Source of the DNA: Tubulanus polymorphus
Taxonomy: Eukaryota > Animalia > Nemertea
Length of the DNA: 64,000 bases
Assembly (NCBI RefSeq): GCF_964204645.1
Contig: NC_134036.1
Span: forward strand, 2,356,001-2,420,000
Reading direction: 5' to 3'
Positions 4,301 to 63,525 of this stretch are shown piece by piece; the stretch's first letter is position 1; each line of letters opens with the position of its first letter. The translations under genes were made by a program, and so were the position numbers. The notes beneath the pieces were generated by a model, which worked only from the letters and a program-made list of their open reading frames with translations, was not told the DNA's origin and did no database searches.

Positions 4301-5502
4301 AACAGAAGTGCTGAAACGTTTTGCTCATAGAACCGATAATGCTGACATCCTATACTTTGAACCCTCACTTTCAGAAAACTTTATTCTTAAACTTGTTTAC
4401 ATCATTTGCATCGGTCTACCATGGTATTTTGAGCTATAAGATGTTTGACGTTTTGACGGAACTGACAATTTCTTATCGAATGGCCACATTCTCTTGGTCA
4501 AAGACTTCTCGCCTGACTCGAACACAAAAAGGAAGAAGATCCCCGTCGTTAAGAACAACAATCAAAATCGTTTGTTTGTTTTTTTTGTTTCACTTCAAAC
4601 TAATTCCAGTCGCCATGGAATCCTAATCTAACTTCGTCGAGGAGCAACAATACTCATAACTATCGCGTCGCCTAGCGCTAGGATACATTCAAAAACTAAC
4701 TGATTGCATTGTAGCTAGCTAGTGCTATTATGAAACACTATTACTGACCACTGTGACGTCAGCAGGCAGATGCCGACAGTATTGCCTCATGAGATGACCA
4801 TCGCTAAATACAGAAACTAATTTAGAACGAGATATAATATCGTCGGCTGCTCAGTACGGCATATGCGGCAGCAGCCGAGAGATTCATGGGGTCAATATTG
4901 ACTTGGACCCCGAGCCCAATTAGCCGCGCAGGCAACACGACAGTGTACAGTACACACAAACAGCGCGCGCGTTTCGTCTGTCTTAATAATCCCGATGTAT
5001 AATTCAGTTATCGAAATGACGTCTGACGAATTCTCTGAATAATCATCACCGTTAACCATATGTAGATATAGTAGTGTATATCGGATACAACATTGGTGGT
5101 CGAGCGGGTGTTGATTATTCAAGAGATAAGATTTACAATTTACGATACGATATTCGATATGCGTCATTTTACTCTTGGATGTCGAATTATGCAGATACAG
5201 AAAGTGTGGAATGTAAACATTCGCGTTTGCGAGCGCCGCCACCAGGGGCAGCACCAGTGTCCTCCCCAACCGAATTGTCGCGTATTTGTAGTTTGTAGCT
5301 CTAGGAAATGTGCGACAATATCGAAGGTCAATATTCCTCCAGAGCAAATAATCCCGGCACGAAGATCAAAGAGTCGCCCGTTAGGAACCGTTAGATTTGA
5401 AATTCAAATACTAACTCGGCGAATATACAATATACGCGCACGCGTATTTGTGTAGATGCGCCAGCGAAATTGAACGTAATGAGAGATGAACGCTTTCTGA
5501 AG

Positions 5503-5531
5503 TTAACCCTCTCCATCCGAGTCCCGACCGC
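5503..5531 (-). CDS. Candidate terminal coding segment (GGRDSDGEG*), followed by a 3'UTR-like region to about 4360
   Basis: Strong acceptor ttactgttctcctcag|GCGGTC; stop TAA at 5505-5503; AATAAA on the minus strand at 4385-4380. Confidence 0.45.
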
Positions 5532-7879
5532 CTGAGGAGAACAGTAATAATAATATTTTGATATCTTTACCATTATCATAAAAATATTTCGATATCCTTA
5601 CCATTATCTCAACAATATATCATCATCTAATTATGAAGTATATATCAAGTGTTTGCACTGTCCCACACTGTGCACTGTCCCACAGTTCCTTTCTATATCC
5701 TTTCATCAAACAATCTCAACAATATCTAAATCTTAAACATAATCTCATGATCTCAAGACAATAATCTCTAAAGAATCTCAATAACTAGCTAACTATCTAA
5801 TCATCTAATGATGGAGTATATCAAAAGTGTAATTTTTCCCGTCCAACACGATCAACCGCGTTATATTAAAAACAAACATTAAAAACCACATTCCTTAAGT
5901 AGCAAAGACAAGACGAGATTCTCATCTGCGCTATCAATCCATATCTCACAATCTCAGATATATCTCTATCAAAACGTAATTAATCTGGACAGTTACTATT
6001 GATCCCGACAAGCCGAACGTCGAAAGCCTTTAGCGTTAAAACGTTCTCTCATCTCTACAGACCACCGCTAATTAGCAACGTTACGCTGTCCGTGTGACGT
6101 TAACGTAAAAACCGACCCGTAAGCGTGTCGGTTCTGCATAACGTAACGACGACGTCGAGACAACAATGAGAGAAAGTAACGTCGGCAACGTTATCATTTC
6201 ATCATAGCGGTCATTACGGCAAATCCGTGGTCAGCGTTAATTGGACTCGTAGCGTTACGCTTACGTGACTTTATTACGTAATTAACCCTCGGAATCTTTG
6301 AACGCAGTTGCTAAGCTGCGACGTTCATTTTCTCTCTTGACCCGTTACGCGAAGATCGACGACGGACGTTTCGATTTTTTTCGCTTGTCTCGTTGATCGG
6401 ATATCGATGAGAAAGACGATGAGGGGGATGATGAGGACAAACGATTGCGGCGGTGATTTACGACGAAGTCTCAATTTACGACGGAGATGAAAATAAAAAA
6501 AATACGTCAGTAGCGTGACTGGAGTTTGTTATGATTCTCTTTTCTTTCTTCTTCGACTCCCGCGCGGTCCAGTTTTATGAAAAGACGTAAACTACCGTAA
6601 ACGTACACTCAACCCGTCTGATAACGGAAAGTATTGTTGTTGTCGCTACGGGTATTGTTGTTGTTTTGTAGTACTCGAACAAATTGTAGAATATAAACTA
6701 AGGTTAGTTTAAAGTTGGTGAAAGTGAAACTAGATACTATTGAAAAAGTGACCGTTCAAATGACGCCTGGACGACTGGATGGAGGAAGCGGAACGGACGG
6801 CTGGACGGACAGACAGCCAGACGGACGAATATGTCTGTAAAGTGAACAGTTTGTGTTAAGTGGTCTCTAGATGGTTGGTTCATTTAGTTCCCAACCCGAA
6901 ATGGACGCCCTAATTACCGCTTCCGACAGACGCAAACCGCATGTATTTACGGTTAATTCTCTCTAACGGAACGTATAATATACATCCGCGTAACGCCAGC
7001 GTTAACGCTGCATACGTTAATCAGCGTTCGACCACGAGTACGTGAGAGGCATAGGTGACGACCACATCCGAGATTATACCCAACCGCCGTCGAGATGAGA
7101 TTTTCAGATATATTTATTCATATCTCAAATTCTGACACTCGCTTGTTGACACTTTCCGGATTCTTGCAGATGCGTTACACCGTCATAATATCAATTGTTG
7201 CATATTGCTCCTCACATATTTGAGATTGTTGCTTAGCACCCCTTCCAACAGTTAAGTTATCAATGGAAACGTAATAACGATAAACTTTTAATTGTGACTA
7301 TGGCAACTGTCCACTGGTTAACATAAAACAACCTTAAATGTTTGAGCAACTGCAACGCCAGGTTTATATCAGACTCAGTTCAAAGGAGTCACCCGCACAC
7401 ACACGATGCCCTTTTCGTCCCCTACTCCGCTACCTCGTGACCTGTCCTTACTTATAAATCAACAATCGTTCGCCAATCAGTAATCTGACACTTTCCACTC
7501 GGTTGTCAAGGGGAATACTCCGAAACTAACGAACTCGCTATGCCGTGTGGCATTTAACAGTTTTTTATATGGACAATCAACAAACAGCCGAAGAGTTTTA
7601 CTGATTCTGCGACGCATTGGTGAAAAAAGTTTTGCTATTAGGTCACAACATATGGAGGTAAATCGGGACAAAGAAGCCGATCTTTGGTCATGGTGGTTGA
7701 TTGAGTCATGGTGGATTAGTTTTAACAAAACTATAGCCTGAGCATCTTCTCCGATACTTTCTTTGCAACCGTTTTTGGCCAATAGTTTATCACGACATAT
7801 CGTATGGTTCATTACTTCGCAAACCTACCTTTTTCTTTATGTTTTTTTAACCGTTTATGATGGCTAATATCTGATGGAG

Positions 7880-8285
7880 GCATCTTCCTAGTTAACCAAA
7901 CTAGCTTGGGAATTTATCCATAATTTCTTATCTACAATTTTTCCAACTTAACTTAACGAGCATTTTTTGTACATTATTTTTCAGATAGCGCAGTATGCTG
8001 TGGGCGCATTCCTTCCTAGTTAACCAAACTAGCCTGCGCATTTTTCCATAACCACTTATCAACCGTTTGTGGCCGATAGCCTATCGTGACATATTCTTCA
8101 TAGTTAACTAAATGAGTCTGGGCCTTTTTCCATAATCTGTGACCAGTAACTTATCGAGACAATGTCTAACTATAGCCTGGGCATTTTTTCATAATCTCTC
8201 ATCTTCCGTGTTGCGCCAACAGCTTATTGAGACATATACTTCCTAGTTACCTAAACTATAGCCTGGGCATTTTTTGTAGATTATT
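7880..8285. repeat. Degenerate tandem repeat
   Basis: TTCCTAGTTAACCAAACTAGC and variants recur about five times. Confidence 0.7.
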
Positions 8286-8443
8286 TTTGGTGTCCAGGTA
8301 TCTCAGTAACACTGTTGGCGCGCATTGACTGAATGAGACGTGAAGTATGCCGTGGTTTTGAAAATCTCTAAGATCGAGTATCACTCTCACGCTACTCGAG
8401 ATAGTGCGTATCCGTATTGAGAGTGAGTGTGGACTGTACTCAC

Positions 8444-8473
8444 CGTCTGTTACTGGCTGTATGGCGCAGACGA
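8444..8473 (-). CDS. Candidate 30-nt frame-preserving micro-exon (VVCAIQPVTD)
   Basis: taactcttcag|TCGTCT...CAGACG|gtgagt; phase 1-1; open in the chain frame and has a TAA in the alternative MDFP frame. Confidence 0.4.
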
Positions 8474-8530
8474 CTGAAGAGTTACTAGTGCTAATTACTG
8501 TTGCGGACGTTTTTATGGGATGAATGTGGC

Positions 8531-8763
8531 GAGAGTGAGAGAGTGAGAGTGAGAGAATGAGAGTGAGAGAGAATGAGAGAGAGAATGAGAGAGTGAGAGT
8601 GAGAGAGAGAGAGAGAGAGAGAGAATGAGAGTGAGAGAATGAGAGTGAGAGTGAGAGAGAATGAGAGAGGGAGAATGAGAGAATGAGAGTGAGAAAATGA
8701 GAGAGAGAATGAGAATGAGAGTGAGAGAATGAGAGAGTGAGAGAGGGAGAGAGAGAATGAGAG
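8531..8763. repeat. GA-rich compound microsatellite (GAGAGT/GAGAAT)
   Basis: Direct inspection. Confidence 0.95.
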
Positions 8764-9249
8764 ATGATTCTTGAGATTCAGGAGCAGTGATGCGGTGAGT
8801 TATTGAGACTCTGCACTCAGGATGCAGTCTAGGGCAATTATTGAGGTTTTTGGGGTAGTAGTTCTTGAGAAGGGCGCAAATGTAATGGCAAATGAAACAA
8901 ATGAAATAAATGAATAAATTGTCATTTAGTTATTGGTTGATTATTTATACATATCCTTTTAGCAAGAATTCCTTCCAAGCATAATGTCGATATTTTAATA
9001 GAAATTTGATTACATTAATTACCATACATACAACAGGTCAGAGCTACTATTATGATTTTGAAAAAAATGTTTAAAGCCACTAAACGATTTAATGGCGAAG
9101 TTCATAAAGTTCTCTAGCAAAACCTTACAATATGATCTAGCTTTACCGCAGTCTTCAAAATTTAGGCAAACTTAGGCCAGTCCTTCGCCAATTTGATAGA
9201 AGAATTCCTATTTGTAGAAATGTTCGCTAAATTAATTACAAATTAAGTG

Positions 9250-9578
9250 TAAATATTGTCCAAAATCTACAAAGAAGTCTTCTGCTTCTGGTTGCCAGTG
9301 ATTTTAGTAATGCGCAGCACACACTTTAGTCCTACTTGTAATCTCAAGGTTGTCCGAGATACTTGTTGATATTCTAGCTAAAAGAAAGTCCAAAATCTAA
9401 GAAGTCAAACCCACGCTATGTTTTTCCCTGAGAATACACTTTTGTCCTAAAAATTATCATTTTTTGGAAAGATTCCAATTTGTAGTGTAAATTATCCAAA
9501 ATCTTCTAAAAAAGTCTTCTGCTTGCCAGTGATTTTAGTACTTTTGTCCTACTTGTAATTTCAAGGTTGTCCGAGATA
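9250..9578. repeat. Local ~100-bp direct duplication
   Basis: AAGTCTTCTGCTT...GCCAGTGATTTTAGTA...GTCCTACTTGTAAT.TCAAGGTTGTCCGAGAT occurs twice. Confidence 0.8.
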
Positions 9579-9945
9579 TATCGGCCTGACGACAAGAGAG
9601 GGAGATACGTATTAGTTATAGAAATGCATATTCCGATTCCGTGCGGAGATCACGTGACTTACACCGGTGCTCATACATATAAACAATGTCTCAAAGGCGG
9701 TTATGTAAATAAAACCGTTACAGGAGCAGACGATACCGAGAGAAAAACGTGATTACATGGCGCAGACGGCAAAATGTCGATCAACCGTGGAAACAAGAGA
9801 TGGAGAAAAGTTTTCGTCCGTCGTTTGTTTCTGCTAAACGAATTACGCACAGAGTAGTTGGGCGTAAAGTAGTCCTCGATTGCCGCAGGAGGAACTAAAC
9901 CGGTAGAAGAAATGGACGGCTGTAAAATCTTGTGTCCTCGCTTAC

Positions 9946-9997
9946 CTGTGCAGACTTTGTTGGAATGGGAAAGTCCATAGTATGGCGATAACTTAAC
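9946..9997 (-). CDS. Candidate 52-nt exon (VKLSPYYGLSHSNKVCT)
   Basis: atatttag|GTTAAG...GCACAG|gtaagc (consensus donor); phase 0 to 1. An alternative frame reads MDFPIPTKSAQ. Confidence 0.5.
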
Positions 9998-10317
9998 CTA
10001 AATATCTCAATTTTAAAGATGGATTGAATACAGACTATTGTCAGGACTCCTCAATTACCGAAGGAGACCATTTTGGTAGAAATATGCAGACGAACGAATT
10101 ATACACAGACTAATTTATAAATTATGAATATTCTATTTGAGACGATGCAGATTTTATATGAACGGCCTTTGATCCAGAAAAAGGATTTAGTTTCAGGAGC
10201 TATTGTACCTATGAAGGCCTATAATTTATATTTCATCTTTACTTCTAATGCTAAGTACTATAAGTATATGAAATATTGTGTCCAATGCCCCCATTACAAT
10301 TGTTTTTATACATATTG

Positions 10318-10390
10318 GCCTAGTCCAACTGCACCTAGTCCGACTTCGTCTAGTCCGACTTCGCCTAGTCCGACTTCGCTATGTCCAACA
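10318..10390. repeat. 15-bp minisatellite (TAGTCCGACTTCGCC-like)
   Basis: About five units; explains the SPTSP ORF pattern. Confidence 0.85.
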
Positions 10391-10877
10391 AGTGCATATA
10401 CTCGTGCAAATATCCAGAAAGGTCTCATGCGAAACTTATGCCGAGGAATTGGGCATTTTGGAGGAAAAGAGTGATACTTTTTTCTGGCTTGTAAAAGTGA
10501 ACAGGGACCTTAGAAAATAGTTCTGTGCCGATGAATGGAAACTGTGCAGCACCAGGTGGAGTAATTCTGTCTCCAATTTGAAAATCTTTGACGAGACGAC
10601 GAGCAGACGATCGTACACTGCTAACAATAAGGTGTAATATATATTACGAGTCCGGACAGACAGACGACTATTGATAAACAGTAATTGTACGCTCACGCTC
10701 GTCAGGATCCTATCCACGTTTAAAGCAAATCAGATCAATCCTTCAATCGGGAGAATGAGAATGGGAAATTGGAATTTACACTGCTCTGTCGTCTGCTCGG
10801 AATCCGAGTTTTTCCAATCGGAAAGGTTGTATTCCGATGCTACGATGGGACCCAAATACAGCAAGTTCCAAAATATT

Positions 10878-10970
10878 CAAAGTTTCAGTTCAAAAAGGTC
10901 AAGTTCGAGTTCAAACTGGTCAAGTCCCAGTTCAAACAGGTCAAGTTTCAGTTTAAATAGGTCCAATTCC
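10878..10970. repeat. 21-bp minisatellite (AGGTCAAGTTYCAGTTCAAAC-like)
   Basis: About four degenerate units. Confidence 0.8.
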
Positions 10971-13451
10971 ACAGTTGGGGAGAGAGATCGATGGCCTTTG
11001 TGTAGTCATGACGATAAAACCAGCCCAACGGCTGAAGTTGTTAAAATGATAATAGAACTAAGTCGATGTTAGACTGGTCTTAAGTCTTCCATACATGGAA
11101 CCACGACTTTAGTTGTTAGATGAACGCAATTGATTATCACGGGTTATTTGCTGCCCGCAATCCAAGATAAACCAGGTATTAATATTTTGCAGCCTTATGA
11201 AGCCAGAATATCTACAAATTTCAATCAAACATCCACGATACATCAGACTCGTCGTGTGACGTTTGACGAACGTCGTAACTCGTCAGTCGTAGGACGAATA
11301 ATCTGTCAGTCTGCGCGATACGTGGCTGCCTGGGGGCTATATTTATCTTCTGAATGGAATCCCTGCTATGTTTTTCATTATTTGTAAATCAACTTTTCAA
11401 AATTCGATTTCAAACCGCCGACGACGACGACGATAGCGAGGTCGTCTATATGTAGTTGCATGGCTACGGCAACGGTATTCATTGTTAGTTATATTAATAG
11501 CTATCGGGTAGGGTGGATTTTATAAGGAAGGATTACGAACGAACGTGCGGGTGAGCTTGTTGTTGTTCGAACCCAGAATATTTTGGTTGTAACTAGAAAG
11601 GCTCTAAGAAACGAAAAATATGTCCATGATGAATAAAGTTTTTTTGTCAAAAGTTGTCAGGTAAATCAACGTGAGCTAACTGTTCTAAGGTCATGTGAAT
11701 ACTATCTGAAGGAGGTTAGGGAGATAACGTTCAAAGATATCTTCCTTTTATTTCTGGGATTGAGGGCCATAAGGGTCGTGCTTCATATTTTAATGCCTCG
11801 AACAAGTTTTGGAACGCATTCAAAGACTCTTTGTGCGGTAGACATTTCCATAACCTATCTGCACTATTCTTCTTAAAGCAATATAGTTCGTCTTTGAAGC
11901 TTCTTCAAGGTTTTTTCGTTCATGACCAGAATTCCAAAAACATGGAGTGAACTTTCGCTTTTACATACGTTTGATGCCATCACGAAATTCTGTTCTCCTA
12001 ACTTTCCATTTTCGTTAACAAAATCGTTAATGATGTTAATTTTTTTTCACGTTAATTTTGTGCGAAAGAAAATTCTTAGAATTAAAAAAGAAAATTAATT
12101 TCATCACCTCGTCGCCAAAAAACTTTCAGTTTCCATTAACAAGATTTTTTGGTAATATTGGTTTTATCATAAAAAAACGGAAGCTCTTAATAGAAAATTT
12201 ATCGATTTTGTAACAGCAACACGTGATGTGTCGGAGCATTCCCTTCCCCGAGCCTGGGCCGAGAGTGCTGTAACTCTCCCCAGCCAAGTTCAGTGATAAA
12301 CTCTAAATATCTATTTCATCCAGAATTTTTTCATCAATGCAGTTTTCATGTATCATTTTTGATTTTGAATTTGAAATTAATAAAATCATAAAAAAATGAA
12401 GTAACACTCTGGAGTTCAATGAAGGCATCAGATACACATCCACCAGATTGTCCCTATTCCAAGGCCCCAAGTCTTACACTATTCTCCAGCACCGTGCATT
12501 ACAAATTTGCCTTTAAAGCAACTGGTAGATTATTCAAGATGCCAAATTAAACCGTCATTTATAATATTACGACATGAGTGGGAGTCCCCGGGGGTGTGAA
12601 CGGAGTGCGCGCTGCACCACCAGCAGGAGAGTACATCGAGAACTGCCGCTACGGCTACTGCTGAATTAGCGATAATTTGTAACAGTCCATAAAACGGCAA
12701 TATTTCAAACGACGACTCATTTTGAAAATTACAGTCTGTTCCAACACCGCAAGCATCTATTGAAGGAAGAAAATAAAGATAGGACTGGTTAATTTTTCTT
12801 TTCTTTTCTTGAAACAGGGATTCCCCTTGCTATTTATTTGAGTGGTAGCGAAAAGGAGTTTGATTCTTGGATATCCCATAACCAATAAACGTATACCCTA
12901 TCTCTAACAACAACAGGGCGGTCAGTTGAAAAATCCAGTAACCAAGATAAGGTTTTTTTTCTAGATCCCCGGGACTGGAATAAAACGTAAAACCCAGATC
13001 GTGAACGACGAACCGACGCAGTAATTATTTTCTTTTTTTCTGTCTCGAGATTTTCATTTTCAAAAGGTTATCTCCGCCAGTACAGCTCGGAGCTCGGAGC
13101 TCGGCTATACGGCTGTTTCAACAGACGAGCGTGTGTTTACTCACTAGCTGAGCAGACGATCACATTATTAAACGATTTTTTAACGAAGATGGTTTTGATG
13201 AGAAAATAAAAATAAATAGCCAATGGCTTCACAGACGGCGTTTCACAGGTCTTACGACGACTAACTACGGTTGAATCGACAGTAAGGTCATACAGATCTA
13301 TGATGGCAGACGACATGTTCACTTAAAGGATCTTAACCACATCGACATGATTTCCAGGATGATAGGGAGGAAGGTTCAGCGTTTTTCTAAAAGTTTCTCA
13401 ACTAAAACGACTGTATGATACACAACTTTTCCGGAAGTGTCTATATCACAT

Positions 13452-38314: not shown

Positions 38315-38954
38315 CAACAAAACACTCCAAGAGGCGATAAAAACTACAATGTCGACGCTAATGGAATTCTATAAAGGAGCAATCGGTGACCAGCAGAAAA
38401 TAACTAAACCCAATAAAGATTTTTATTCGGTATTCGTTAGAACCGAAACGTGTTTTAAATGGCTAAAAGAATCAGACAATAAAATAGGCACGACTCGTAC
38501 CGAACTGCGGGGGTCGAAAGCACATTCAATACAGATTAAAGTAAATAAGTAAATATTGACTATTGAAGCACTTATGTTTGGTGACAGTGGCCACTGTGCG
38601 GTCAGAATATATGTACCGGCAAACTACTGTCTTTTATAAAAGATTTAATGAATGAAATGTTACTCTTATGTCTGTCTCGAGGCTTCAATTCCCACCGGTG
38701 AATTATATGTGGGTTTTGTAATTTCTGGTCGATGTTTGAAGGAAAGGATTTAATTAAGAATAGATAATGGGATATAATGGGATTTATCGTATACAATAAA
38801 TCAGGCGGTGTTATGACTAAGAGGGTCAGAAGGTTTGATTTGAAAACATTGACCTTCATTTCATATTGAGTGAAGTTTTCAATCTGTAGCCTGTAATCTG
38901 TAGCCTGTAACCTGCAGCCCTTCAGGCATATACTTGATGAAAGTGTGTTGATAT

Positions 38955-39125
38955 ATGTCTAATGTCTAAAGTTCTTAGTTAATTATGAATTAGAAATGTC
39001 TCAGGTGAAGCACTGAACACGTGTGATGAGTGGACGATCAGTTTTTGAAAGTTGCGCTGATAAAATGTCTAATGTCTGGTGTTTGTAGTTCATTTTCAAT
39101 TAAAAATGTCTCAGGTGAAGTACTG
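38955..39125 (-). repeat. Inverted dispersed copy of the ~110-bp monomer
   Basis: AATTAGAAATGTCTCAGGTGAAGCACTGAACAC is the reverse complement of the 44000-45000 monomer. Confidence 0.85.
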
Positions 39126-39829
39126 ATTAAACTGATTAATTTATTTATAGCATTATTGTTAAAGCTTTCAACGATTAGTGATGCGACGATTCAATTTCAT
39201 TTTGAAATATTTATTTTCTTATTTTGAAATATCTATTTTGATATATCTTTTTTCCCCCTCTCTTTTCTCTCTAATGCGTCCTAGAATTAGTTCCCGAGAT
39301 CCTCGAGGCTTTCAATTCCAAACGTAACGAAGATTTTAAACCGTATTTAAGCCGATTTACTCCCAGGGTCGTCTGCCAAAGATCGGAAACGTTACAGAAT
39401 TAATACTATCTACAATCTGTTTATTTGAGAGTGGTTTCCGAAAAACGTCAAGGCTTTCATTTCTTCTAGCATCCACTAATAGCTGGGGTTTTTTTCAAAA
39501 TCCAAATAGTACTTTACGTAAAAAGAGGATGTGACAATTTAACAAAAAGCGCACAGTCCTCGAAAAGAGATTTTAAGGAACCCTCGGGTGAGACATCAGG
39601 ATTAAAATCTAGATCTCCTAATGCTCGCATCGTACGAGGAAGTCAAAGCTACTAAGAAGGCTACAGCTGAAAGGTTGTTTTGAGTAGCTACATTCAAACG
39701 ATACCTTGAACTAACCGATCAAAGACTATATGTTTACAATTTACGAGAATCGAAAAAGGGATAAATAAATGTGCACAGATCTTAAACATATTAAAGACCT
39801 AACTTAAGCCCTTGTACTAAATAATTCAG

Positions 39830-43767: not shown

Positions 43768-45006
43768 CGAGGTGCGAGGAATGAGGGCTAGAAAATTATT
43801 CCGTCAGACGATTCTCTGGAATTTTTATTTGCGAAGTGTTAAGTCAATATTACGCGAAGTGCCCATAAAAATGAACTGCGAACCGAGAGAGTTTTTAACC
43901 GATTGCGATAAAAAGCTAATTAATCGCTTAGTCTGGTTTAATGCACCTTATCGCGCAGATATCGTCAATCTGCAGCCTGGACCCTCTACCCTGTAACCCC
44001 AAAATGAACAACAAACACCAGATATTAGACATTTCATCAGCGCACTTTCAAAAACTGATCATCCACACTTCACATGTGTTCAGTGCTTCATCTGAGACAT
44101 TTCTAATTGATAATGAACTACAAACACCAGACATTAGACATTTTATCAGCACATTTTCAAAAACTGATCATCCACACTTCACATGTGTTCAGTGCTTCAC
44201 CTGAGACATTTCTAATTGAAAATGAACTACAAACACCAGATATTAGACATTTTATCAGCGCACTTTCTCAAAAACTGATCGTCCACACTTCACATGTGTT
44301 CAGTGCTTCACCTGAGACATTTCTAATTGATAATGAACTACAAACACCAGATATTAGACATTTTATCAGCACACTTTCTCAAAAACTGATCATCCACGAT
44401 TGACGCTATGTTCGATACCACAAATACCAGAGACATCGAGGTGCGAGGAATGAGGGAAATTTCGGGCTAGAAAATTATTCCGTCAGACGATTCTCTGGAA
44501 TTTTTATTTGCGATGTGTTCAGTCAATATTACGCGAAGTGCCCATAAAAATGAACTGCGAACCGAGAGAGTTTTTAACCGATTGCGATAAAAAGCTTATT
44601 AATTGCTTAGTCAGGTTTTTATGCACCTTATCGCGCAGATATCGTCAATCTGCAGCCTGGACCCTCTTCCCTGTAACCCCAAAATGAACTACAAACACCA
44701 GATATAAGACATTTTATCAGCACACTTTCAAAAACTGATCGTCCACACTTCACATGTGTTCAGTGCTTCTCCTGAGACATTTCTAATTTAAAATGGACTA
44801 CAAACATCAGATATTAGACATTTTATCAGCACACTTTCAAAAACTGATCGTCCACACTTCACATGTGTTCAGTGCTTCACCTGAGACATTTCTAATTGAA
44901 AATGAACTACAAACATCAGATATTAGACATTTTATCAGCACACTTTCTCAAAAACTGATCATCCACGATTGACGCTATGTTCGATACCACAAATACCAGA
45001 GACATC
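43768..45006. repeat. Higher-order duplication: ~670-bp unit made of a ~230-bp head plus an array of ~110-bp monomers
   Basis: CGAGGTGCGAGGAATGAGGG at 43768 and 44437; monomer ATGAACTACAAACACCAGATATTAGACATTTT repeats. Confidence 0.95.
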
Positions 45007-49968: not shown

Positions 49969-50040
49969 GCGTTCGTGGTGTAAAGGTTAGCATCGTTGCC
50001 TTCCAAGCAATGGATCCGGGTTCGATTCCCGGCGAACGCA
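49969..50040 (+). tRNA. tRNA-Gly-TCC: tRNA-Gly, anticodon TCC (copy 1)
   Basis: 72 nt; acceptor stem GCGTTCG/CGAACGC plus discriminator A; D arm with TGGTGTAAAGG (A box); anticodon arm GTTGC-CTTCCAA-GCAAT; T arm CCGGG-TTCGATT-CCCGG (B box); T-rich run downstream. Confidence 0.97.
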
Positions 50041-50163
50041 CGAATTTATATTTTCCTCACGAAATCTTCGGAATCTTTTCTTTTTAATGTTTAAAGATCC
50101 ACTGAATACTCAGATTCAAAATAAAGCTTCTTTTTCTAAACCTATTTCAAAATAGTCAAAGAA

Positions 50164-50291: not shown

Positions 50292-50363
50292 GCGTTCGTG
50301 GTGTAAAGGTTAGCATCGTTGCCTTCCAAGCAATGGATCCGGGTTCGATTCCCGGCGAACGCA
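50292..50363 (+). tRNA. tRNA-Gly-TCC: tRNA-Gly, anticodon TCC (copy 2)
   Basis: Identical 72-nt sequence to copy 1, followed by a TTTTT Pol III terminator. Confidence 0.97.
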
Positions 50364-50497
50364 CGACTTTTTCTCACAAATTATTCCAAAAAAATCTAAT
50401 CATACGAATGCTCTTCATTAATCCTTTTCAAAACATCTCTTATTTTCATAACTCCGTGGTATCGTTTTTAAAATTTTGAAATCAAACACCCGGTTTC

Positions 50498-52179: not shown

Positions 52180-52251
52180 TGCGTTCGCCGGGAATCGAAC
52201 CCGGATCCATTGCTTGGAAGGCAACGATGCTAACCTTTACACCACGAACGC
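52180..52251 (-). tRNA. tRNA-Gly-TCC: tRNA-Gly, anticodon TCC (copy 3, inverted)
   Basis: Exact reverse complement of copies 1 and 2; the A-run near 52165-52171 is a T-run terminator on the minus strand. Confidence 0.97.
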
Positions 52252-53237: not shown

Positions 53238-53699
53238 AAATATATTCTCAAAACGGCCAACTTCACAAGAGAGGCTTTAAATAAATATATTCTCAAAACG
53301 ACCAACTTCTCGCAAGAGAGGCTTTAAATAAATATATTCTCAAAACGACCAACTTCTCACAAGAGAGGCTTTAAATAAATATATTCTCAAAACGACCAAC
53401 TTCTCACAAGAGAGGCTTTAAATAAATATATTCTCAAAACGACCAACTTCTCGCAAGAGAGGCTTTAAATAAATATATTCTCAAAACGACCAACTTCTCA
53501 CAAGAGAGGCTTTAAATAAATATATTCTCAAAACGACCAACTTCTCACAAGAGAGGCTTTAAATAAATATATTCTCAAAACGACCAACTTCTCACAAGAG
53601 AGGCTTTAAATAAATATATTCTCAAAACGACCAACTTCTCACAAGAGAGGCTTTAAATAAATATATTCTCAAAACGACCAACTTCTCGCAAGAGAGGCT
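53238..53699. repeat. 47-bp near-perfect tandem array, about 10 copies
   Basis: Unit AAATATATTCTCAAAACGACCAACTTCTCRCAAGAGAGGCTTTAAAT. Confidence 0.97.
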
Positions 53700-55319
53700 A
53701 CAGAAGAATAGCTGTATTCTTCACTTACGGGACGGAGTTTCATTAGAAACGCCGTAATGTTTATGCACTGATTATTTAGTGGAATAACAGAAAAGATACT
53801 CGTAATATCTCCTACTGTACAATTAAAGATTACAAAAATAGTTTGTGCGTGTGTGTTCAGATGGCAGCACCGGCCGATCTATCGCCGAATTCAAACACAT
53901 TTTAGAAAATCAGATGTATTAAAAACCCCATATTTCCAAAATGGTTTAGATATATGTAGATCTCGCCTGTATTTGCGAATAGCGTTAACAGCAGGCTTAT
54001 CGAATAGATCTGAAGTAATGCTGGTGCAATGGAACGTTAAAATTCTACATCTTAAATAGTTTTTAAATTCTTTAGGACACGGGCAAAACGACGGCTTTAA
54101 CCTAACAAAAACGAATCAGTCGATAATAGGTAGACGATTATCAGATATTTTGCTAGAAATAAGTGGATATACTTCCAATATCAATGATCTAATAATAATA
54201 ATTTATCGGTTTAAAATCTGTTTAATTGATCTGATTAATTTATCTGTTAAAATCGCTCTACTAAACGGTAATCATAGCGCTTTACGATAGTAATACCTGA
54301 AACCGTTAAACTATTAAAATAACATTATGCATTACATGAACACGAAAACAAACTGTAAAACACATTATTCAATGGTAAAAACTTTCCTAAACGGATTTGT
54401 TTTGAGGTTTCGTTTAAAAGCATCGACGGATAAGGATTCCCAAATACTGGACGGTAAAATATTCCATCTCAGCGGTCGTTGTATTTATTCAGAACGTAGA
54501 CCTTAGTAGACTACCAACTGCGTCCAGCATTTGACTCGAAATTAACGTTCATTTTAAGTTGGTCGATATTACTTGTTTTTTATTACATATACCGGTTGTA
54601 ATCGAACATTAAATCAATGATAAACTAAACTTCGTTGCAAATAAGAGGGTCTGAAAACGATCAGTGTATTTTCATGGGCATCATCGCAGCATTGGAGCAG
54701 TGGGGATTCAAATTGTTTTCTTTTTTAATCATTAGTTTTCGATAAAGTTTATTCCATATGCCGTGTGTATAGAGGTGACGTCGCGTCGGTGTTTTATCAT
54801 GCGGCAACTTCGACAATTCGAATGTTCAGAGATATTTCTATAGATCAATATTTCAATGGTACCCGTGTGCCCGGTCTATATGCTAGATGTATTACAGAGG
54901 TGACGTCACGATCGCTCGGCGTGTGTAACAGCGGAACGATCTATACACTTCAATGTAAACCCTTTCAACGACCAGAGACAACAGCGCGGCTGCCTATTGG
55001 TCAGTATTGAAATACGCCACCGGTCGACAGTGAGTAGAATCACTAAGCCGGTCATTCATCTCTTGATCTTCACACTGTGCAGACCTGATTTCGAATATGG
55101 CGTTCATCCCGGCGATCATCCTGGCGATCATCCTCGCGATAACGCTGCGCTCTACTAGCTGGTTCTTTCCATATAAAGAACGACGTCTTTATGTTTTATG
55201 TGTTACTGTCCGTCCGTGTACTGTCCTGTACTGTTCTGTGTTTATTAACCCGTTCTATTTTTCAGGATCTAATCCGTTTTATTTTTCAGGGCCGATTTAT
55301 CTGTCGATTTTCAACGTTC

Positions 55320-56098
55320 TATGGAACAAAACTAATGTCCGAAAGCGTCGGCTCTTTCGCCGGTCATGTGCAGGGGATGTCAGAAAAAGAGTCGGTCAGG
55401 AAATGCTGCCCTCTACACGCCTTCATACGGAACACGAAAACCAGGACGACAACTGCTTCACGTTCGTTATCTAACTGCAGAGTGTGCTTGGCGACGTCAA
55501 TGACGGGCACATCTGTCGGATTGTTCGCGGTAAAAATGGCGCGGTTATACTGGACTGTCACGCTACTAGCATTCATTGTGTCCTTGTGACCGCCCGGATG
55601 AGGGATGATTCTACTGTCACGCTCTTTGTTTCTGGTATTCTGAGTCGGCTGAGGGATGATTCTACTGTCACGCTCTTTGATTTCTAGTTTGAGCGCTAGT
55701 TTTCATTGTGTCCTTGTGATAACCTCGGTCAGTGGATGAAGTCTCTCGTCGGCTTGTGAGTGCTAGTTTCATTGTGTCCTTGCGACAACCTCGGTCAGTG
55801 GATGAAGTCTCTTGTCACGCTTTTGGGTGCTAGTTGAGATCCTGAATCTCAACCCGGTCAATCTGGTTGTACTGCGCTATTTTTGCCTTGAACAATCGCA
55901 CAGGTTTGTCAGTTACTAACGTCGCCCAGTACACCCTGTGGTTAGATGGTGTACATGGGGAGTTGTCATTCAGGTTTTCGCGTTCTGTGTGAGGGCGTGT
56001 AGAGGGCAGCGAATTCCTGGCTGACTCTTTTTCTGGTATCCTCCGCTCATGAACGGCGAAGGAGAGCCGACGCTTTCGGGCATTAGTTTTGTTCCGTA
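55320..56098 (+). ncRNA. Candidate long hairpin RNA: diverged inverted repeat, arms 55320-55557 and 55859-56098, ~300-nt internally repeated loop
   Basis: Manual alignment of arm 1 with the reverse complement of arm 2: ~78% identity; 28 differences form G:U on the + strand RNA, 8 form A:C, ~14 are transversions. The inverted repeat is certain; RNA function is inferred. Confidence 0.6.
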
Positions 56099-56203
56099 CC
56101 AGGTTTTCATCTCTGTTCTTTTTTTTCATTTCAGGACTCCCACAGAAGACGACGACGCCCCAAGAGGACAGAAGATGGCGATGCTACAACAAGACGATAC
56201 TGA

Positions 56204-56638
56204 ACTCGGCAATCTTGACAAAGTTAAGTTGATAAACATGAACATTACAATTAATCGAAGAATTGTAACTACAGAATGTCTTTCTTTTACTCATTTTAGG
56301 TACACTTAATCTGAACACGCCCATCATGATTAAGAAGATGACGGAGACACCATAGGACGATGAAAAAAGGATGCTCGGCAATCTTGAGAAAGTTAAGTTG
56401 ATTAACATGTAAATCACAATTAATCAAAGAATTGTTTGACTACAGTATGTCTTTCTTTTACTCATTTTAGGTAAACTTAATCTGAACACCCCCACCACGA
56501 TTAAGAAGATGACGGAGACACCATAGGACGATGCAAAAAAGGATGCTCAGCAATCTTAAGAAAGTTAAGTCGATACACATGTCAATTACAATTAGTCAAT
56601 TCTGTGACTACAGAATGTCATTCTTTTACTCATTGCAG
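56204..56638 (+). repeat. ~171-bp tandem repeat whose unit resembles exon plus intron (2.5 copies)
   Basis: CTCGGCAATCTTGA.AAAGTTAAGT...TTTACTCATTTTAG recurs. Confidence 0.9.
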
Positions 56639-57577
56639 CCTAACATGAAACTGGAAAGGCCCAGCATGAGATACATCAGCCATCTAGAACCTACCGACCA
56701 AAAGTCACCACAGAAAACTCCAGCTTGAATTAAACTCGTCAACAAAACACCAAGAGACCTTTCGAAACGGAACCTGGCAGTCTTGATAAAAAGCTAAGTT
56801 GATTTTTCATTTCTGGTTTAGCATCAATGGCAGGATGCGTAGCACTGAAGAGAACAGAGGCGCTGGTGAAGTTCTAAATTTTACTATTAACTGATTGAAG
56901 ATTGAAGCTCTGTAGCCGGTATATGGTTATCAGTGAGTTGAAATCTATGACAATCATTGCTCTAAATAGTACTCGTATATATATTCTCGTATATATATTC
57001 TCATATGTATATTCTTGGCTGAGTAATGAAGTGTAGATAGGTCAGTTATTAATCAACAGATTTAACTTAAGTGTTACTAGGATATAGGCAGTCAAATTAC
57101 CAAAACAAACTATAGCTAAAACTATAGCTATATAGCTTAATAATTAACTGATTGTTTAGATATCTAAAATAAAGATGAATTCAAATGATCCGAAATTCTT
57201 CTAGTATAGACATTTCAGACCTCTATATTGTTTAATTTACATGTGACGGTCTGCACGGCTGATCTTATATCCAGCCTCATATTCTGTTGTCACAAGTGTA
57301 AATTATCATCAATGCTTATTAGGATGGTGTGCCTCAAAGGATGTTTTTTTTTCTTATTTCAGCTGAACTCTATCCTGGAAATAATGGTCTTCGATTGGTA
57401 AATGACAACCAAAAGTAGATGACTACTGATGCCGATGAAAACTGCAGACGTCCAGATGAGAAGTTGTAGAGCCAGCAGCAGCGAGTTATCGCCCAACGAT
57501 GGATTTCTTCAACGAATGATGGTGGATCTCTACCAACACCGATTCAGGAGCAGCAGTAGCGGATCCCATCAACACTC

Positions 57578-57779
57578 GAGGAGCAGCATGGACAATAGCG
57601 CGTCTTATAAACACTGATCCAGGAGGAGCAGAGACAATAGTGTATCTTATAAACACTGACTGAGGAGCAGCTAGTGCATCTTATAAACACTGACTGAGGA
57701 GCAGCTAGTGCATCTTATAAACACTTGAGGAGCAGCTTGTGCATCTTATGAACACTTGAGGAGCAGCAGAGACAATAAT
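57578..57779. repeat. ~31-38-bp tandem repeat (GAGGAGCAGC...CATCTTATAAACACT)
   Basis: About six units. Confidence 0.9.
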
Positions 57780-60700
57780 GGACTTCAAAGTAAAGTACTG
57801 ATTTATTTTTACGCTTCAAACTTGTACAAACTGGTCTAGTCAGAAATGTATTTCACAAAATTTACTAGATTACAGTCTACTTGTAATGAATTATTCAATG
57901 AAATTGAAGTTAGGTTAATTAGGGTTCTGTGGCCTGAGAAGGAACTATCTACGTTTGAATATTGCAATAAAATCGCATCCTTATACTTTAAATTAATTGG
58001 GCGAACTGTTTTCGAGAAGACTAATGAATTTATAAACAGGAGTCATTCTGTTTTGTAATCTTTACTGAAAGTTCCTTCTTAGAGTCTCAAAAAATCTACG
58101 CTGCGTGATTTTGACCTTTGCTCCCAGATAGATTAGTTAAGTTAGGTTAGATTAGTTAAGTTAGGTTTGTGACGCTGTTTCAATGATCGCGTCCACCGCC
58201 AATCGACTCATAGGTTGGTTGAGTTGCGCCTAAACTGAGATATAGAATCAACATGATATTGCGAACTTTAGTTCAGATAATTTTCATACTTCGTTAAGCT
58301 TAACTTGGAATGATTTGTAATAATGACATATAAACCTGTTCTCCACATCAGCCTGCCATGATTGGATGAATTGGTCTTTTAGTCTTCTATCAATCTTAGA
58401 AATAGTGGTTCATTTTATATTTCCTTGGCATGAAAATAATGTGCTATGCCTAAACGTTTAAGTAGCCAGGATTTTTAACAGTTGTATATCTGCGAAAATA
58501 TGTCGACATAAATTTTTAGACTTAACTTTTAGACATAATAAAAAAGATATGCGTAATATTCTCGTTTTTGGATTTCAATGTTTAAAAAATCGTAATTTGG
58601 CCAAAAAGTGTGGTGCCACACCTACAGTTCTGTACATACTCGCTTTTTAACATTGGTTTGGAAACAAATTTCTGCGATTGGAAATCATTTAAATGTATCA
58701 AGATTTTTATGGACGACTGACCAGTCCGGTGCGCCTTGTACCAATCATTTTAGAGCAGATAATAACCGCTTTGAGTTCATAACGTTAGGCAGTGTTCTGC
58801 GTACAAATGAGTATTTACAGAACTGTAGATGTACTATTCTCGTGGCTTTGATTTTTCAAAGGCCCATATTTGGGAAGTTGTACAAGATGACGGATTTGAC
58901 CAATGAGTTGACTATTTTGATTTTCACCTGGAGTTCTAACTTAAGAGCTTTCATAGCTCTGTACGATGATCATACCTGGTTATTTGAAAACAGTTACATC
59001 ATCATATAGGAGTTGTTTGTATTCACATAAAAGAGGTATAGCCAGGAATAACTTGGTCTTAGGTTATAGCTAAGAATAACTTTGAACCTTTTTGTTTGTT
59101 GATAGCTGTTTTAACTTCTATTGTAATGGGTAAATCCATATCACGAGGTTGAGATGATCACTTAGCTTCAAATCTGGGTGTTTAATTGTAAACGATTATA
59201 TAAATACAGCAGTGAATTGATAGCGCTTTTCGAAAAATGAGCCCGCCAGAAAAAATGCCTGATGATGTAAATAGAGAAGTATAAATAATACTCAACACAA
59301 AATACATACGTAGTACATAATTAAAGGAAAATAAACAAAACAATAAATAAAATAAATAATAAAAAACTAAATAAATAATGACAACAAAGAATTAATGGAT
59401 ATTCTATTTACATCAATCATCGGGCATTTTTTTCAAAAATCTATCAGCGCAGTAAATAAGGTTCTTCATTTTATAGATTAACCTTCTCTAAGTATGCCAA
59501 CAACTTGTGATCTTTTCTGTTGTTATTTTTGAAGCATTCTATCAGCTCAGTTAATAATAAACGAAACAAATAATCATAAACCTAAACTAAATCGAACACA
59601 CTGAAAAAAATAACTGATAGGATAGAATGCTTTGAATAACTAATGAGAGGTCAAACGTCCTTTGAACTAGCGCACCCAGTCACTGTTATAACTATTGATT
59701 GTTTAAGGGGTACTCTGGTGAATAAAATGTGATTGGTACAATTTACACAAGTGTTAAAACAGCTATGAACTTAAATTATTGATATCATTGCTGATATCAT
59801 TGTTGATTATTTATTGACAGTATAATCATTTAATGTTTTCTTAAGCTGGAAGAAAAATGTCAGAATAGTTATTTCAAGTGAAGTAATAATGTCTGAAAAT
59901 CTTAATTGAGACAATGCAACTAGGTAAAAATATAGTTTTCTAATAAAAATGTCAACGAAAATGAAATTAAAGATTGATTTATTAATCTTAAGCTTTCCAG
60001 AGTGAATTCATAGGTTTTATCTCTATTTTAATGCTTTTATATTGAACTGTTTTCGCAATACAGTTCACGTGTTTGTTCACGAGGAACTTATATATCATAT
60101 GTTCATTAGGACCTTACATGATGAATCCTTGAGTTTAATATCTGCCATTTAACAAGATATAATTGTTGTCATAAGAATAAAACTACATGTTCATCACTCA
60201 TGTTATATCTCTTCAATCGTTTAATTTAGTTCAGTTTAGTTTAGTTCAGTTTAGTTTATAGCAACTTTTTCAATGTTGTGGCTTTCAGTGGTTCATAAAA
60301 TACAGATTTAATTAAGGTCCTGTCTAAACTAAAGGAGCAGTTCCTTGATAAATGAGGAACATTTAGCAGTGTTAATTAGTAAGTTGTTCTAGTTTAAAGT
60401 TTATACGTCCATACTGTGGTTGGACTGTTTTTGAAATATACAGTCATCGTGTTTGAGGAACTTACATTATGATTCCTCAAGCACGTAATCTGGCATCTTC
60501 TATAATTGTTGTATACCTCCCATGGTTGGACTGTTTTTGAAATAGAATCCAAATGTTAGAGGAACTTATAATTCCACGAGCATTTTGTATAAATGTTGTA
60601 AGAGAATAAATATGATTTACGTTAAAACCTTCTAATTCTTAAGCGAAGTTTTTAGCAAAAATCCAATTGCTTTCCTACCGAAATACCGATTTCAATTGTG

Positions 60701-62314: not shown

Positions 62315-62700
62315 GGACGTATATAAGGCACTTCCGGTTGACTAGTTCCAGTTGGTTAAGTTCCGGACGACTAGTAGTCAACGGCGATGATGAAGGCAAT
62401 TTATGTCGTCTGTTACCGAGAGAGACAGTGACGCAAAGATAACGCGGATGAATGCAGGCGACTTCACACGCTGCAACTCGGATGCTGAAACGTGCTCCGT
62501 TACTAAACATCTTACAGTAAGATGAAATCAGCCAATAATTCACATTCCGAGCACTATAAAGATATCGGTATGTCTTTACAGCAAGACACTTCTAGAAAAA
62601 AATCGTCACCGCATTCATATATTCCCATATGTAGAGAATCCCATAACAAAAAGATGATATAAAGTCTAATAAAAGTTTCCTTGTGGTAGCATTTGAAGGA

Positions 62701-63525
62701 TTCCTGAAAATGACTATTAGGACATAGCCAAAATAACGAATAAACTACACTAGCTCAAGTAATACAGTATTTCTGAAGATGACTATTAGGATAAAGTCGA
62801 AACGTCGAATAAACTACACTAGCTCAAAGAATACAGTTGTATTCTTGAACATGACTATAAGAATAAAGTTGAAAAGTTGAATAAACTACACTAGCTCAAG
62901 TAATACAGTATCCCTGAAAAGACTATTAGGACATAGTCAAAATAACGAATAAACTACACTAGCTCAAGTAATACAGTATTCCTAAAGATGACTATTAGGA
63001 TAAAGTCAAAACGTTGAATAAACTACACTAGCTCAAGGAATACAGTATTCCTGAAGATGACTATTAGGATAAAGTCAAAACGTTGAATAAACAACACTAG
63101 CTTAAGAAATGCAGTATTCTTGAAGATGACTATTAGGATAAAGTCAAAAGGTTGAATAAACTGCACTAGCTCAAGGAATACAATTGTATGTATTCTTGAA
63201 GATGACTATAAGAATATAGTTGAAAAGTTGAATAAACTACACTAGCTCAAGTAATACAGTATTCCTGAAGATGACTATTAGGATACAGTCGAAACGTTGA
63301 ATAAACTACACTAGCTCAAGGAATACAGTATTCCTGAAGATGACTATTAGGATACAGTCGAAACGTTGAATAAACTACTCTAGCTCAAGGAATACAGTAT
63401 TCCTGAAGATGACTATTAGGATATAGTCGAAACGTTGAATAAACTACACTAGCTCAAGGAATACAGTATTCCTGAAGATGACTATTAGGATAAAGTCGAA
63501 ACGTTGAATAAACTTCTGGCTCAAG
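62701..63525. repeat. 69-bp tandem satellite, about 12 copies
   Basis: Unit TTCCTGAAGATGACTATTAGGATAAAGTCGAAACGTTGAATAAACTACACTAGCTCAAGGAATACAGTA. Confidence 0.97.

What the first reader, a model, noticed from the sequence alone, without database searches (positions are those of the whole stretch)
55320..56098. ~240-bp inverted repeat with strong G:U-wobble bias: candidate long hairpin-RNA (hpRNA/endo-siRNA) locus
Seen: arm 1 (55320-55557) aligns end to end with the reverse complement of arm 2 (55859-56098) at ~78% identity. Of 36 transition differences counted by hand, 28 give G:U pairs in a + strand RNA and only 8 give A:C mismatches (rough binomial p about 0.001), so about 90% of positions still pair. 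A neutrally decaying DNA palindrome such as a MITE should give the two classes about equally. The arms are non-repetitive, more GC-rich than the flanks and lack the TIR/CWG signature of the local MITEs. Established: wobble-rich long fold-backs in spliced Pol II transcripts are characteristic of Drosophila hpRNAs processed by Dicer-2 into endo-siRNAs; long dsRNA is also an ADAR substrate. Inference: selection maintains a long imperfect RNA duplex here, in an animal group where I know of no described hpRNAs.
Basis: partly seen in the sequence, partly recalled or inferred. Interest (0 to 1): 0.88.

Follow-up and report, generated by a model that had tools for sequence, protein, structure and literature searches.

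The report
Multi-copy wobble-rich RNA hairpin module
The long fold-back and its one-strand G:U bias are real, but it is one copy of a repeat family in a ribbon-worm genome, not a unique small-RNA gene, and no RNA from it could be examined.

Summary
Arms 55313-55558 and 55859-56105 align over 232 columns: 185 Watson-Crick pairs, 26 G:U, 7 A:C, 14 transversion mismatches and 3 indels. On the + strand 90% of positions pair (binomial p 0.0013). The + strand RNA folds at -438 kcal/mol against -345 for the - strand, with unbroken helices of 36, 30 and 29 bp against at most 17. Other inverted repeats in the window show no such bias (pooled about 12 G:U to 17 A:C).

The claim that the arms are non-repetitive fails. 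Contigs of two public runs of the same organism lay 708 and 279 distinct, mostly 90-99% similar pieces on 4 kb around the hairpin, and summed contig depth peaks over 55170-56107.

This scan found the same module before on other DNA of this genome. Three earlier follow-ups put it at about 100-150 copies inside a long gene-like repeat.

The arms show no coding origin, no protein or Rfam match, and no ADAR-like neighbour pattern. No RNA run was available, so transcription and small RNAs are untested. Published work reports that nemerteans lack Dicer-2 and that a nemertean small-RNA library showed no endo-siRNA signature.

Best reading: a repeat-borne + strand RNA fold-back kept by selection, with an unknown product.

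The parts
55178..55312 (+). T-rich leader just upstream of arm 1. It carries two copies of an acceptor-like motif (ttctatttttcag|g at about 55266 and 55290).
   Evidence: Direct repeat D8. The 55170-55303 bin has the highest summed contig depth. A contig of another copy stops matching left of 55178. G+T is 0.61.
55313..55558 (+). Arm 1 of the fold-back.
   Evidence: Alignment and pair classes; fold. The inner part, 55438-55571, has far lower contig depth than the rest, so it varies among copies.
55559..55858 (+). Centre ('loop'): about 4.5 degenerate units of a 51-66-nt tandem repeat. It is G+T rich (A 16%, T 35%).
   Evidence: Repeat families D4-D7; TRF period 66; G+T 0.613. The + strand folds at -96.1 kcal/mol (z -2.05), the - strand at -61.2 (z +0.70). 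High contig depth.
55859..56105 (+). Arm 2 of the fold-back.
   Evidence: At 56053 every covering contig of other copies has C, which would pair with G55363.
55308..55313 (.). TTTTCA, left copy of a 6-nt direct repeat flanking the arms. Possible target-site duplication or chance.
   Evidence: Read directly. It is weakened by high-copy sequence continuing left of it.
56104..56109 (.). TTTTCA, right copy of the flanking 6-nt direct repeat.
   Evidence: Read directly.
54760..55030 (+). Promoter-like and first-exon-like stretch. It has two TGACGTC(A) motifs and ends at a GTGAGT donor-like site at 55031. Inferred from sequence only.
   Evidence: Contig depth rises from near single-copy level at 54500-54633 to multi-copy from about 54768.
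56134..56634 (+). Exon-like pieces after an acceptor-like ttcatttcag|g. They include 2.5 units of a 171-nt tandem repeat with splice-like signals and in-frame stops.
   Evidence: Many variant contigs also lie here.

Best explanation
This is one somewhat decayed copy of a repeat-family module of about 0.9 kb (about 55178-56105). The module sits near the 5' end of a longer dispersed, gene-like but non-coding repeat of a ribbon worm. An old inverted duplication of about 240 bp has diverged to 80% DNA identity. Most transitions were ones that leave G:U pairs in a + strand transcript, so that RNA can still form a duplex of about 235 bp with unbroken helices up to 36 bp, while the DNA is no longer a good palindrome.

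Shown here: the repeat, the strand bias, its specificity within the window, and the multi-copy state. Inferred: that the + strand is transcribed, and that selection on the RNA fold produced the bias rather than chance or mutation.

Most likely action (about 0.3 of the total probability): the duplex is a substrate of double-strand-RNA enzymes. It could be cut by the single Dicer into small RNAs loaded on the siAGO that nemerteans keep, acting on the repeat family itself. The alternative is a cis-acting structure that the repeat's own RNA needs.
For: 26 G:U against 7 A:C, p 0.0013. Fold energies are -438 against -345 kcal/mol. Unbroken helices are 36/30/29 bp on + against at most 17 on -. Control inverted repeats in the window pool to about 12 G:U against 17 A:C. 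Arm differences fall evenly over codon positions (15/18/14), so there is no coding constraint.

708 and 279 distinct contigs, mostly 90-99% alike, lie on 4 kb around the hairpin, and depth peaks over 55170-56107. At 56053, 56047, 56044, 55952 and 55955 other copies carry the base that pairs with this copy's partner base. At the first three the depths are nested (3060 > 412 > 40), which argues against cross-mapping of the opposite arm.

The loop folds better than shuffles only on the + strand. Splice-like signals in the flanks face the + strand. PMC9263138 shows that G:U-substituted hairpin transgenes keep RNAi activity while escaping silencing that perfect inverted-repeat DNA attracts, which is a rationale for such divergence. 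Three earlier follow-ups on other copies reached the same multi-copy picture. Those are leads, not independent proof.
Against: No RNA run was available, so transcription, strand and small RNAs are untested. I could not fetch other copies, so covariation was not tested here.

The bias is a single p of about 0.001 event in a family picked out of thousands of notes, and its copies are not independent, so chance is not negligible. If the loop's G+T share (0.613) is taken as the local mutational expectation, p rises to 0.026.

The kind of runs X1 and X2 is not on record. I read them as DNA because they cover every bin, show no GT..AG joints, and hold a share of the window's words (0.50, 0.24) in line with their contig totals (219 and 108 Mb) against a genome of about 313-358 Mb. 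Copy numbers taken from depth are therefore rough. Nemerteans lack Dicer-2, and a nemertean small-RNA library showed no endo-siRNA signature (PMC11114477).
Confidence: 0.55

Rival explanations
1. Neutral relic: an inverted duplication or fold-back piece of a mobile element decays without RNA-level selection. The G:U excess would come from chance (look-elsewhere effect) or from a local strand-asymmetric mutation process such as deamination of the non-template strand.
For: The loop (G+T 0.613) and the leader (0.61) are also G+T skewed. With p = 0.613 as the null, the excess is only p = 0.026. The family was picked out of 4823 notes on this genome. It is multi-copy like a transposon.
Against: Control inverted repeats show no bias. 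The skew stops at arm 2 and is absent from 56106-57800 (0.44-0.49), which is unlike a transcription-wide asymmetry. The observed 3.7-fold ratio is larger than the transcription-associated asymmetries I know of (own knowledge). Variants in other copies restore pairs.
Confidence: 0.25
2. A Drosophila-type hairpin-RNA (endo-siRNA) gene. A Pol II transcript folds, Dicer cuts it into 21-23-nt duplexes, and these silence a trans target gene.
For: Long imperfect duplex with 29-36-bp helices on one strand only. Gene-like + strand signals around it. Nemerteans keep an siAGO (PMC11114477). In Drosophila simulans hpRNA families and their targets amplify together (titles and abstracts listed).
Against: It is not a unique locus but one of many copies. 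No target-like sequence lies in the window. There is no coding origin of the arms. Dicer-2 is absent from Trochozoa and Notospermus geniculatus showed no endo-siRNA signature. No RNA data are available.
Confidence: 0.12
3. A MITE-like DNA transposon whose roughly 240-bp arms are its terminal inverted repeats.
For: High copy number. A 6-nt direct repeat TTTTCA flanks the arms.
Against: The outermost 12 nt are the worst-matching part of the outer stem (8 of 12). High-copy sequence continues at least 135 nt left of arm 1, and the flanks on both sides are themselves multi-copy, so the arms are not the ends of the repeated unit. This model does not explain the strand bias.
Confidence: 0.05
4. Fossil of ADAR editing. 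A retroelement RNA hairpin was A-to-I edited and then reverse-transcribed, which fixed A:U as G:U.
For: It would give G:U pairs on the transcribed strand only. Other first readers called the family LINE- or RTE-derived.
Against: The 5' neighbour of the G in the 26 G:U pairs is G in 10 cases and A in 1, opposite to ADAR's dislike of a 5' G (the ADAR preference is from my own knowledge). I saw no poly(A) tail (read). There is no reverse-transcriptase or other Pfam match and no protein homologue in either open frame.
Confidence: 0.03

Closest known systems
Drosophila hairpin RNA (hpRNA) loci such as hp-CG4068 and hp-CG18854, and the D. simulans Nmy/Tmy hpRNA families
   Same: A long imperfect inverted repeat in a non-coding, gene-like unit, whose single-strand RNA would form a duplex of several hundred bp. 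Some of those families are amplified.
   Different: Here no transcript or small RNA is shown and no target was found. There are on the order of a hundred dispersed copies. The host phylum is reported to lack Dicer-2 (PMC11114477).
Engineered G:U hairpin-RNA transgenes (PMC9263138)
   Same: One-strand C-to-T type divergence keeps the RNA duplex through wobble pairs while spoiling the DNA palindrome. About 11% of pairs here are G:U, against about 18-22% in those constructs.
   Different: Those are designed plant transgenes with all the changes in one arm. Here the G of the wobble pair is split 13/13 between the arms, and its origin is natural and unpolarised.
MITE- or fold-back-transposon hairpins that yield small RNAs (own knowledge: for example the mir-548/Made1 type and plant IR loci)
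   Same: A multi-copy inverted repeat that can fold as RNA when read through.
   Different: The arms are not the ends of the repeated unit and have no sub-repeats. A strand-specific wobble bias is not expected for such elements.
Mouse oocyte inverted-repeat endo-siRNA precursors (own knowledge)
   Same: Hairpin transcripts processed without a dedicated Dicer-2. This is a precedent for single-Dicer processing.
   Different: No data of that kind exist for this animal.

Membership tests
hpRNA / endo-siRNA locus (Drosophila type) | Inverted repeat able to form a long (over 200 bp) intramolecular RNA duplex | tested here: met
   232 aligned pairs, 90% paired on the + strand, MFE -438 kcal/mol, z -24.
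hpRNA / endo-siRNA locus (Drosophila type) | The hairpin strand is transcribed | not testable with these tools
   No RNA run is listed for the organism. The two runs laid are contigs of unrecorded kind that behave as DNA.
hpRNA / endo-siRNA locus (Drosophila type) | 21-23-nt siRNA duplexes with 2-nt overhangs from both arms, dependent on Dicer and siAGO | not testable with these tools
   No small-RNA data are available. PMC11114477 reports no Dicer-2 in Nemertea and no endo-siRNA signature in N. geniculatus.
hpRNA / endo-siRNA locus (Drosophila type) | A trans target with complementarity to the arms (arms derived from the target gene) | tested here: inconclusive
   There is no other match in the 64-kb window. 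There is no protein homologue in either open frame, no Pfam match and no codon-phase bias. The rest of the genome could not be searched.
MITE / TIR DNA transposon | The inverted repeats are the termini of the mobile unit | tested here: not met
   Multi-copy sequence continues left of arm 1 to about 55178, and the wider flanks are also multi-copy. The terminal 12 nt match only 8 of 12.
MITE / TIR DNA transposon | Target-site duplication | tested here: inconclusive
   TTTTCA lies at 55308-55313 and 56104-56109. This is T-rich context and no empty site is available.
Foldback (FB) elements | Long arms built of tandem sub-repeats | tested here: not met
   No internal repeats in the arms. The tandem repeats lie only in the centre.
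Retroelement carrying ADAR-edited hairpin | Reverse-transcriptase gene or derivation, and ADAR neighbour preference at the G of G:U pairs | tested here: not met
   No RT or other Pfam match. The 5' neighbour is G in 10 of 26 pairs.
Rfam families (miRNA precursors, ribozymes) | Score at or above the family gathering threshold | tested here: not met
   The only hit is mir-329 at 25.9 bits against a threshold of 76.8, E 0.015. Nothing reaches gathering.

The most novel reading that the evidence does not exclude
A ribbon worm, from a phylum reported to lack Dicer-2 and a detectable endo-siRNA signature, carries on the order of a hundred copies of a hairpin-RNA gene kept by selection. Its wobble-rich duplex would feed a non-canonical Dicer-1/siAGO small-RNA pathway (or serve as an ADAR/dsRNA-sensor substrate) that polices the repeat family carrying it.
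Probability: 0.2. Interest if true: 0.75.

Novelty: new variant of a known kind. Interest (0 to 1): 0.42.

Why it matters
If the + strand hairpin is expressed and processed, it would be the first hairpin-RNA family in Nemertea. It would show that trochozoans without Dicer-2 still make siRNAs from long fold-backs, and so give the orphan siAGO of nemerteans a substrate. It would also be a natural example of the principle exploited in G:U hairpin transgenes: keep the RNA duplex and lose the DNA palindrome. If the bias is instead mutational or chance, the locus is an ordinary decaying repeat. For the scan, the main point is that the many 'hpRNA candidate' notes of about 775-780 nt in this genome are copies of one family and should be counted once.

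Tried and rejected
1. Fetching paralogous copies through open reading frames failed. Two searches of the 5.8-billion protein set with the 132-aa and 99-aa ORFs over the arms gave nothing. Ten exact look-ups of local ORFs were all absent. No covariation analysis could therefore be done here.

2. An exact-pattern scan of metagenome contigs with a 38-nt degenerate stem segment gave 0 hits.

3. Coding or LINE/RTE origin of the arms is rejected for this copy. There is no Pfam hit at E <= 1, no homologues, and differences are spread evenly over codon positions.

4. The Rfam scans found only three tRNAs elsewhere and a sub-threshold mir-329 hit that I take as chance.

5. The ADAR-fossil idea is rejected on neighbour preference.

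6. CpG decay cannot be the cause. It is strand-symmetric by logic, and 18 of the 26 G:U pairs are not in TG context. Window CpG o/e is 1.17.

7. Cross-mapping of arm 1 onto arm 2 as the source of the 'pair-restoring' variants at 56044-56053 is unlikely, because their depths are nested (3060 > 412 > 40) rather than equal. It cannot be excluded for the single contig at 55952-55961.

8. A look-alike search among earlier findings gave nothing.

Full report
**What is there**

Reading 55000-56500 and the repeat finder show three collinear inverted segments. A gapped local alignment joins them into one fold-back. Positions 55313-55545 pair with 55871-56105 over 232 columns with 3 gaps, and the RNA fold extends weaker pairing to 55558/55859. 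The pair classes on the + strand are:
- 185 Watson-Crick
- 26 G:U
- 7 A:C
- 14 transversion mismatches

DNA identity is 80% of aligned columns (79% by blastn over 229), and 90% of positions pair in a + strand RNA. The two-sided binomial p is 0.0013.

The + strand RNA of 55300-56115 folds at -438.4 kcal/mol and the - strand at -344.6. Unbroken helices on the + strand are 36, 30, 29, 17 and 16 bp, against at most 17 bp on the - strand.

**Is the bias special?**

All other inverted pairs within 6 kb of each other in the window give balanced counts: 4:6, about 6:5 for one repeat family, 0:1 and 2:6. Pooled, that is roughly 12 G:U to 17 A:C. There is no general + strand bias in the window.

CpG decay cannot produce the bias because it is strand-symmetric. 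Only 8 of the 26 U's sit in TG context, and the window shows no CpG depletion (o/e 1.17). The differences between the arms fall evenly over the three codon positions in every frame (15/18/14), so the arms did not diverge as coding sequence.

The 5' neighbour of the G in the G:U pairs is G in 10 of 26 cases and A in 1. ADAR disfavours a 5' G (own knowledge), so an editing fossil is unlikely.

The 300-nt centre is itself strongly G+T rich (0.613, top 0.8% of 300-nt windows; A 16%, T 35%). The 150 nt before arm 1 are also skewed (0.61). The sequence downstream of arm 2 is not (0.44-0.49 over 56106-57800).

If 0.613 is taken as a local mutational expectation, the G:U excess is only p = 0.026. However, the centre is not a clean unpaired control. 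On the + strand it folds better than shuffles (-96.1 kcal/mol, z -2.05), and on the - strand it does not (-61.2, z +0.70). The skew also ends at the module's edge rather than running along the putative transcription unit.

**It is not a unique locus**

Within the window there is no second copy. The run search returned two runs of the same organism and study, with no RNA run. Laid on 54500-58500, they gave 708 and 279 distinct contigs, most only 90-99% alike (155/232/321 and 50/106/123 by identity class). Variant letters were carried by up to 11 different contigs at single positions across the whole stretch. So many distinct variants cannot come from one locus.

Contigs that match this locus perfectly have depths of about 35-55 in X1. 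Summed depth is about 65 at 54500-54633 and 750-860 at 54768-55169. It is 1,000-11,000 over 55170-56107 and 225-1,570 beyond, apart from a 2,954 peak at 57582-57715.

The tool warns that contig depth is a poor measure, and the kind of the runs is not on record. I take them for DNA for three reasons:
- Every bin is covered.
- No joint has GT..AG ends.
- Their share of the window's words (0.50, 0.24) tracks their contig totals (219 and 108 Mb) relative to a genome of about 313-358 Mb (genome size from PMC8468679).

Only the order of magnitude is claimed: tens to a few hundred copies of the module, inside a longer repeat whose other parts are either rarer or less conserved.

**Agreement with earlier work of this scan**

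This scan found the module before on other DNA of this genome. Earlier notes list at least nine first-reader findings of G:U-biased hairpins, most of them 775-780 nt long. Three follow-ups (s1-516393, s1-500207, s1-506711) describe about 100-150 near-identical copies of the most conserved part of a long gene-like repeat, with no RNA product shown. I used these as leads. My depth and variant data agree with the multi-copy claim. Their claim that the stem is kept as structure I could not re-test.

**Hints from other copies**

Of the 11 listed variant letters inside the arms, 7 change a non-Watson-Crick position of this copy into the exact complement of this copy's partner base. One turns a pair into G:U, one is neutral and two break a pair. 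At 56053 every covering contig has C (depth 3060), at 56047 a subset has A (412), and at 56044 a smaller subset has T (40).

Nested depths argue for real subfamily variation rather than cross-mapped opposite-arm contigs. The family consensus therefore seems to pair better than this copy.

Loose ends show that other copies differ strongly in the inner stem. There, a GCCTCAC in arm 1 and a GTGAGGC in arm 2 appear. These are complementary to each other, but the fragments are too short to build on.

**Context**

Upstream lie two TGACGTC(A) motifs and a GTGAGT donor-like site at 55031. Two acceptor-like ttttcag|g motifs precede arm 1, and an acceptor-like ttcatttcag|g at 56133 follows arm 2. After that come exon-like pieces with in-frame stops, inside a 171-nt tandem repeat whose units carry + strand splice-like signals.

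The hairpin thus sits in an intron-like or 5' exon-like position of a + strand, non-coding, gene-like unit. That is read from sequence only.

T runs inside the stem (TTTTT at about 55880 and 56028) would stop Pol III (own knowledge), so Pol II is the likelier polymerase. Larger ORFs elsewhere in the window gave no convincing Pfam domain.

**Transposon tests**

A 6-nt TTTTCA flanks the arms on both sides. However, the outermost 12 nt match only 8 of 12, multi-copy sequence continues left of arm 1, and the arms contain no sub-repeats. A MITE or Foldback element bounded by these arms is therefore not supported.

No reverse transcriptase, protein homologue or Rfam family matches. A 38-nt stem pattern has no match in metagenome contigs.

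**Literature**

- PMC11114477 reports that Trochozoa lack Dicer-2, that Nemertea keep an siAGO, and that a small-RNA library of the nemertean Notospermus geniculatus shows no endo-siRNA overlap signature. It leaves open processing by Dicer-1. This lowers the prior for a Drosophila-type pathway but does not exclude a single-Dicer route.
- PMC9263138 shows that hairpin transgenes with G:U pairs remain active in RNAi while avoiding the silencing that perfect inverted-repeat DNA attracts. That offers a reason why wobble-type divergence could be favoured.

**Verdict**

- The 'non-repetitive, distinct hpRNA gene' reading is wrong in its first part and untested in its second.
- Selected + strand RNA fold-back carried by a dispersed repeat: 0.55. 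Within that, small-RNA production is the leading but unproven action.
- Neutral or mutational origin: 0.25.
- Classic trans-acting hpRNA gene: 0.12.
- TIR transposon: 0.05.
- ADAR fossil: 0.03.

Small-RNA and stranded RNA sequencing, and a tree-aware covariation test over all copies, would decide.

Noticed in passing
window 49969-50041 (+), 50292-50364 (+), 52180-52251 (-): Three tRNA-Gly(TCC) genes, each scoring 63.4 bits in Rfam. The first and third lie in a 97-nt, 97% identical inverted pair.
   Followed up: partly
window 53238-53699: 47-nt tandem array, 9.9 copies, 98% matches. Purpose unknown.
   Followed up: no
window 56205-56634: 171-nt tandem repeat (2.5 units). Each unit carries an acceptor-like ttttag|g and a donor-like aaa|gttaagt on the + strand, and the exon-like part has in-frame stops. 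Other copies differ by whole-unit deletions (joints skipping 168 and 197 nt).
   Followed up: partly
window 62700-63514: 69-nt tandem array (11.7 copies) that another first-reader note calls a polymer of minimal hammerhead ribozymes. Rfam gives no hammerhead match at gathering or at E <= 1. The unit does contain CTGAAGA and CGAAAC motifs.
   Followed up: partly
window 55097-55180: An ATG-started reading frame with a 12-nt repeat (TGGCGATCATCC, 3.6 copies) encodes a hydrophobic start, MAFIPAIILAIILAITL, just upstream of the hairpin. It could be a relic signal peptide or a by-product of the repeat.
   Followed up: no
window 38934-39126 and 44001-44966: A roughly 190-nt repeat with several inverted copies 5 kb away at 87-91% identity and balanced G:U and A:C counts. 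I used it as a control.
   Followed up: partly
whole window: CpG observed/expected is 1.17, so there is no CpG depletion.
   Followed up: no
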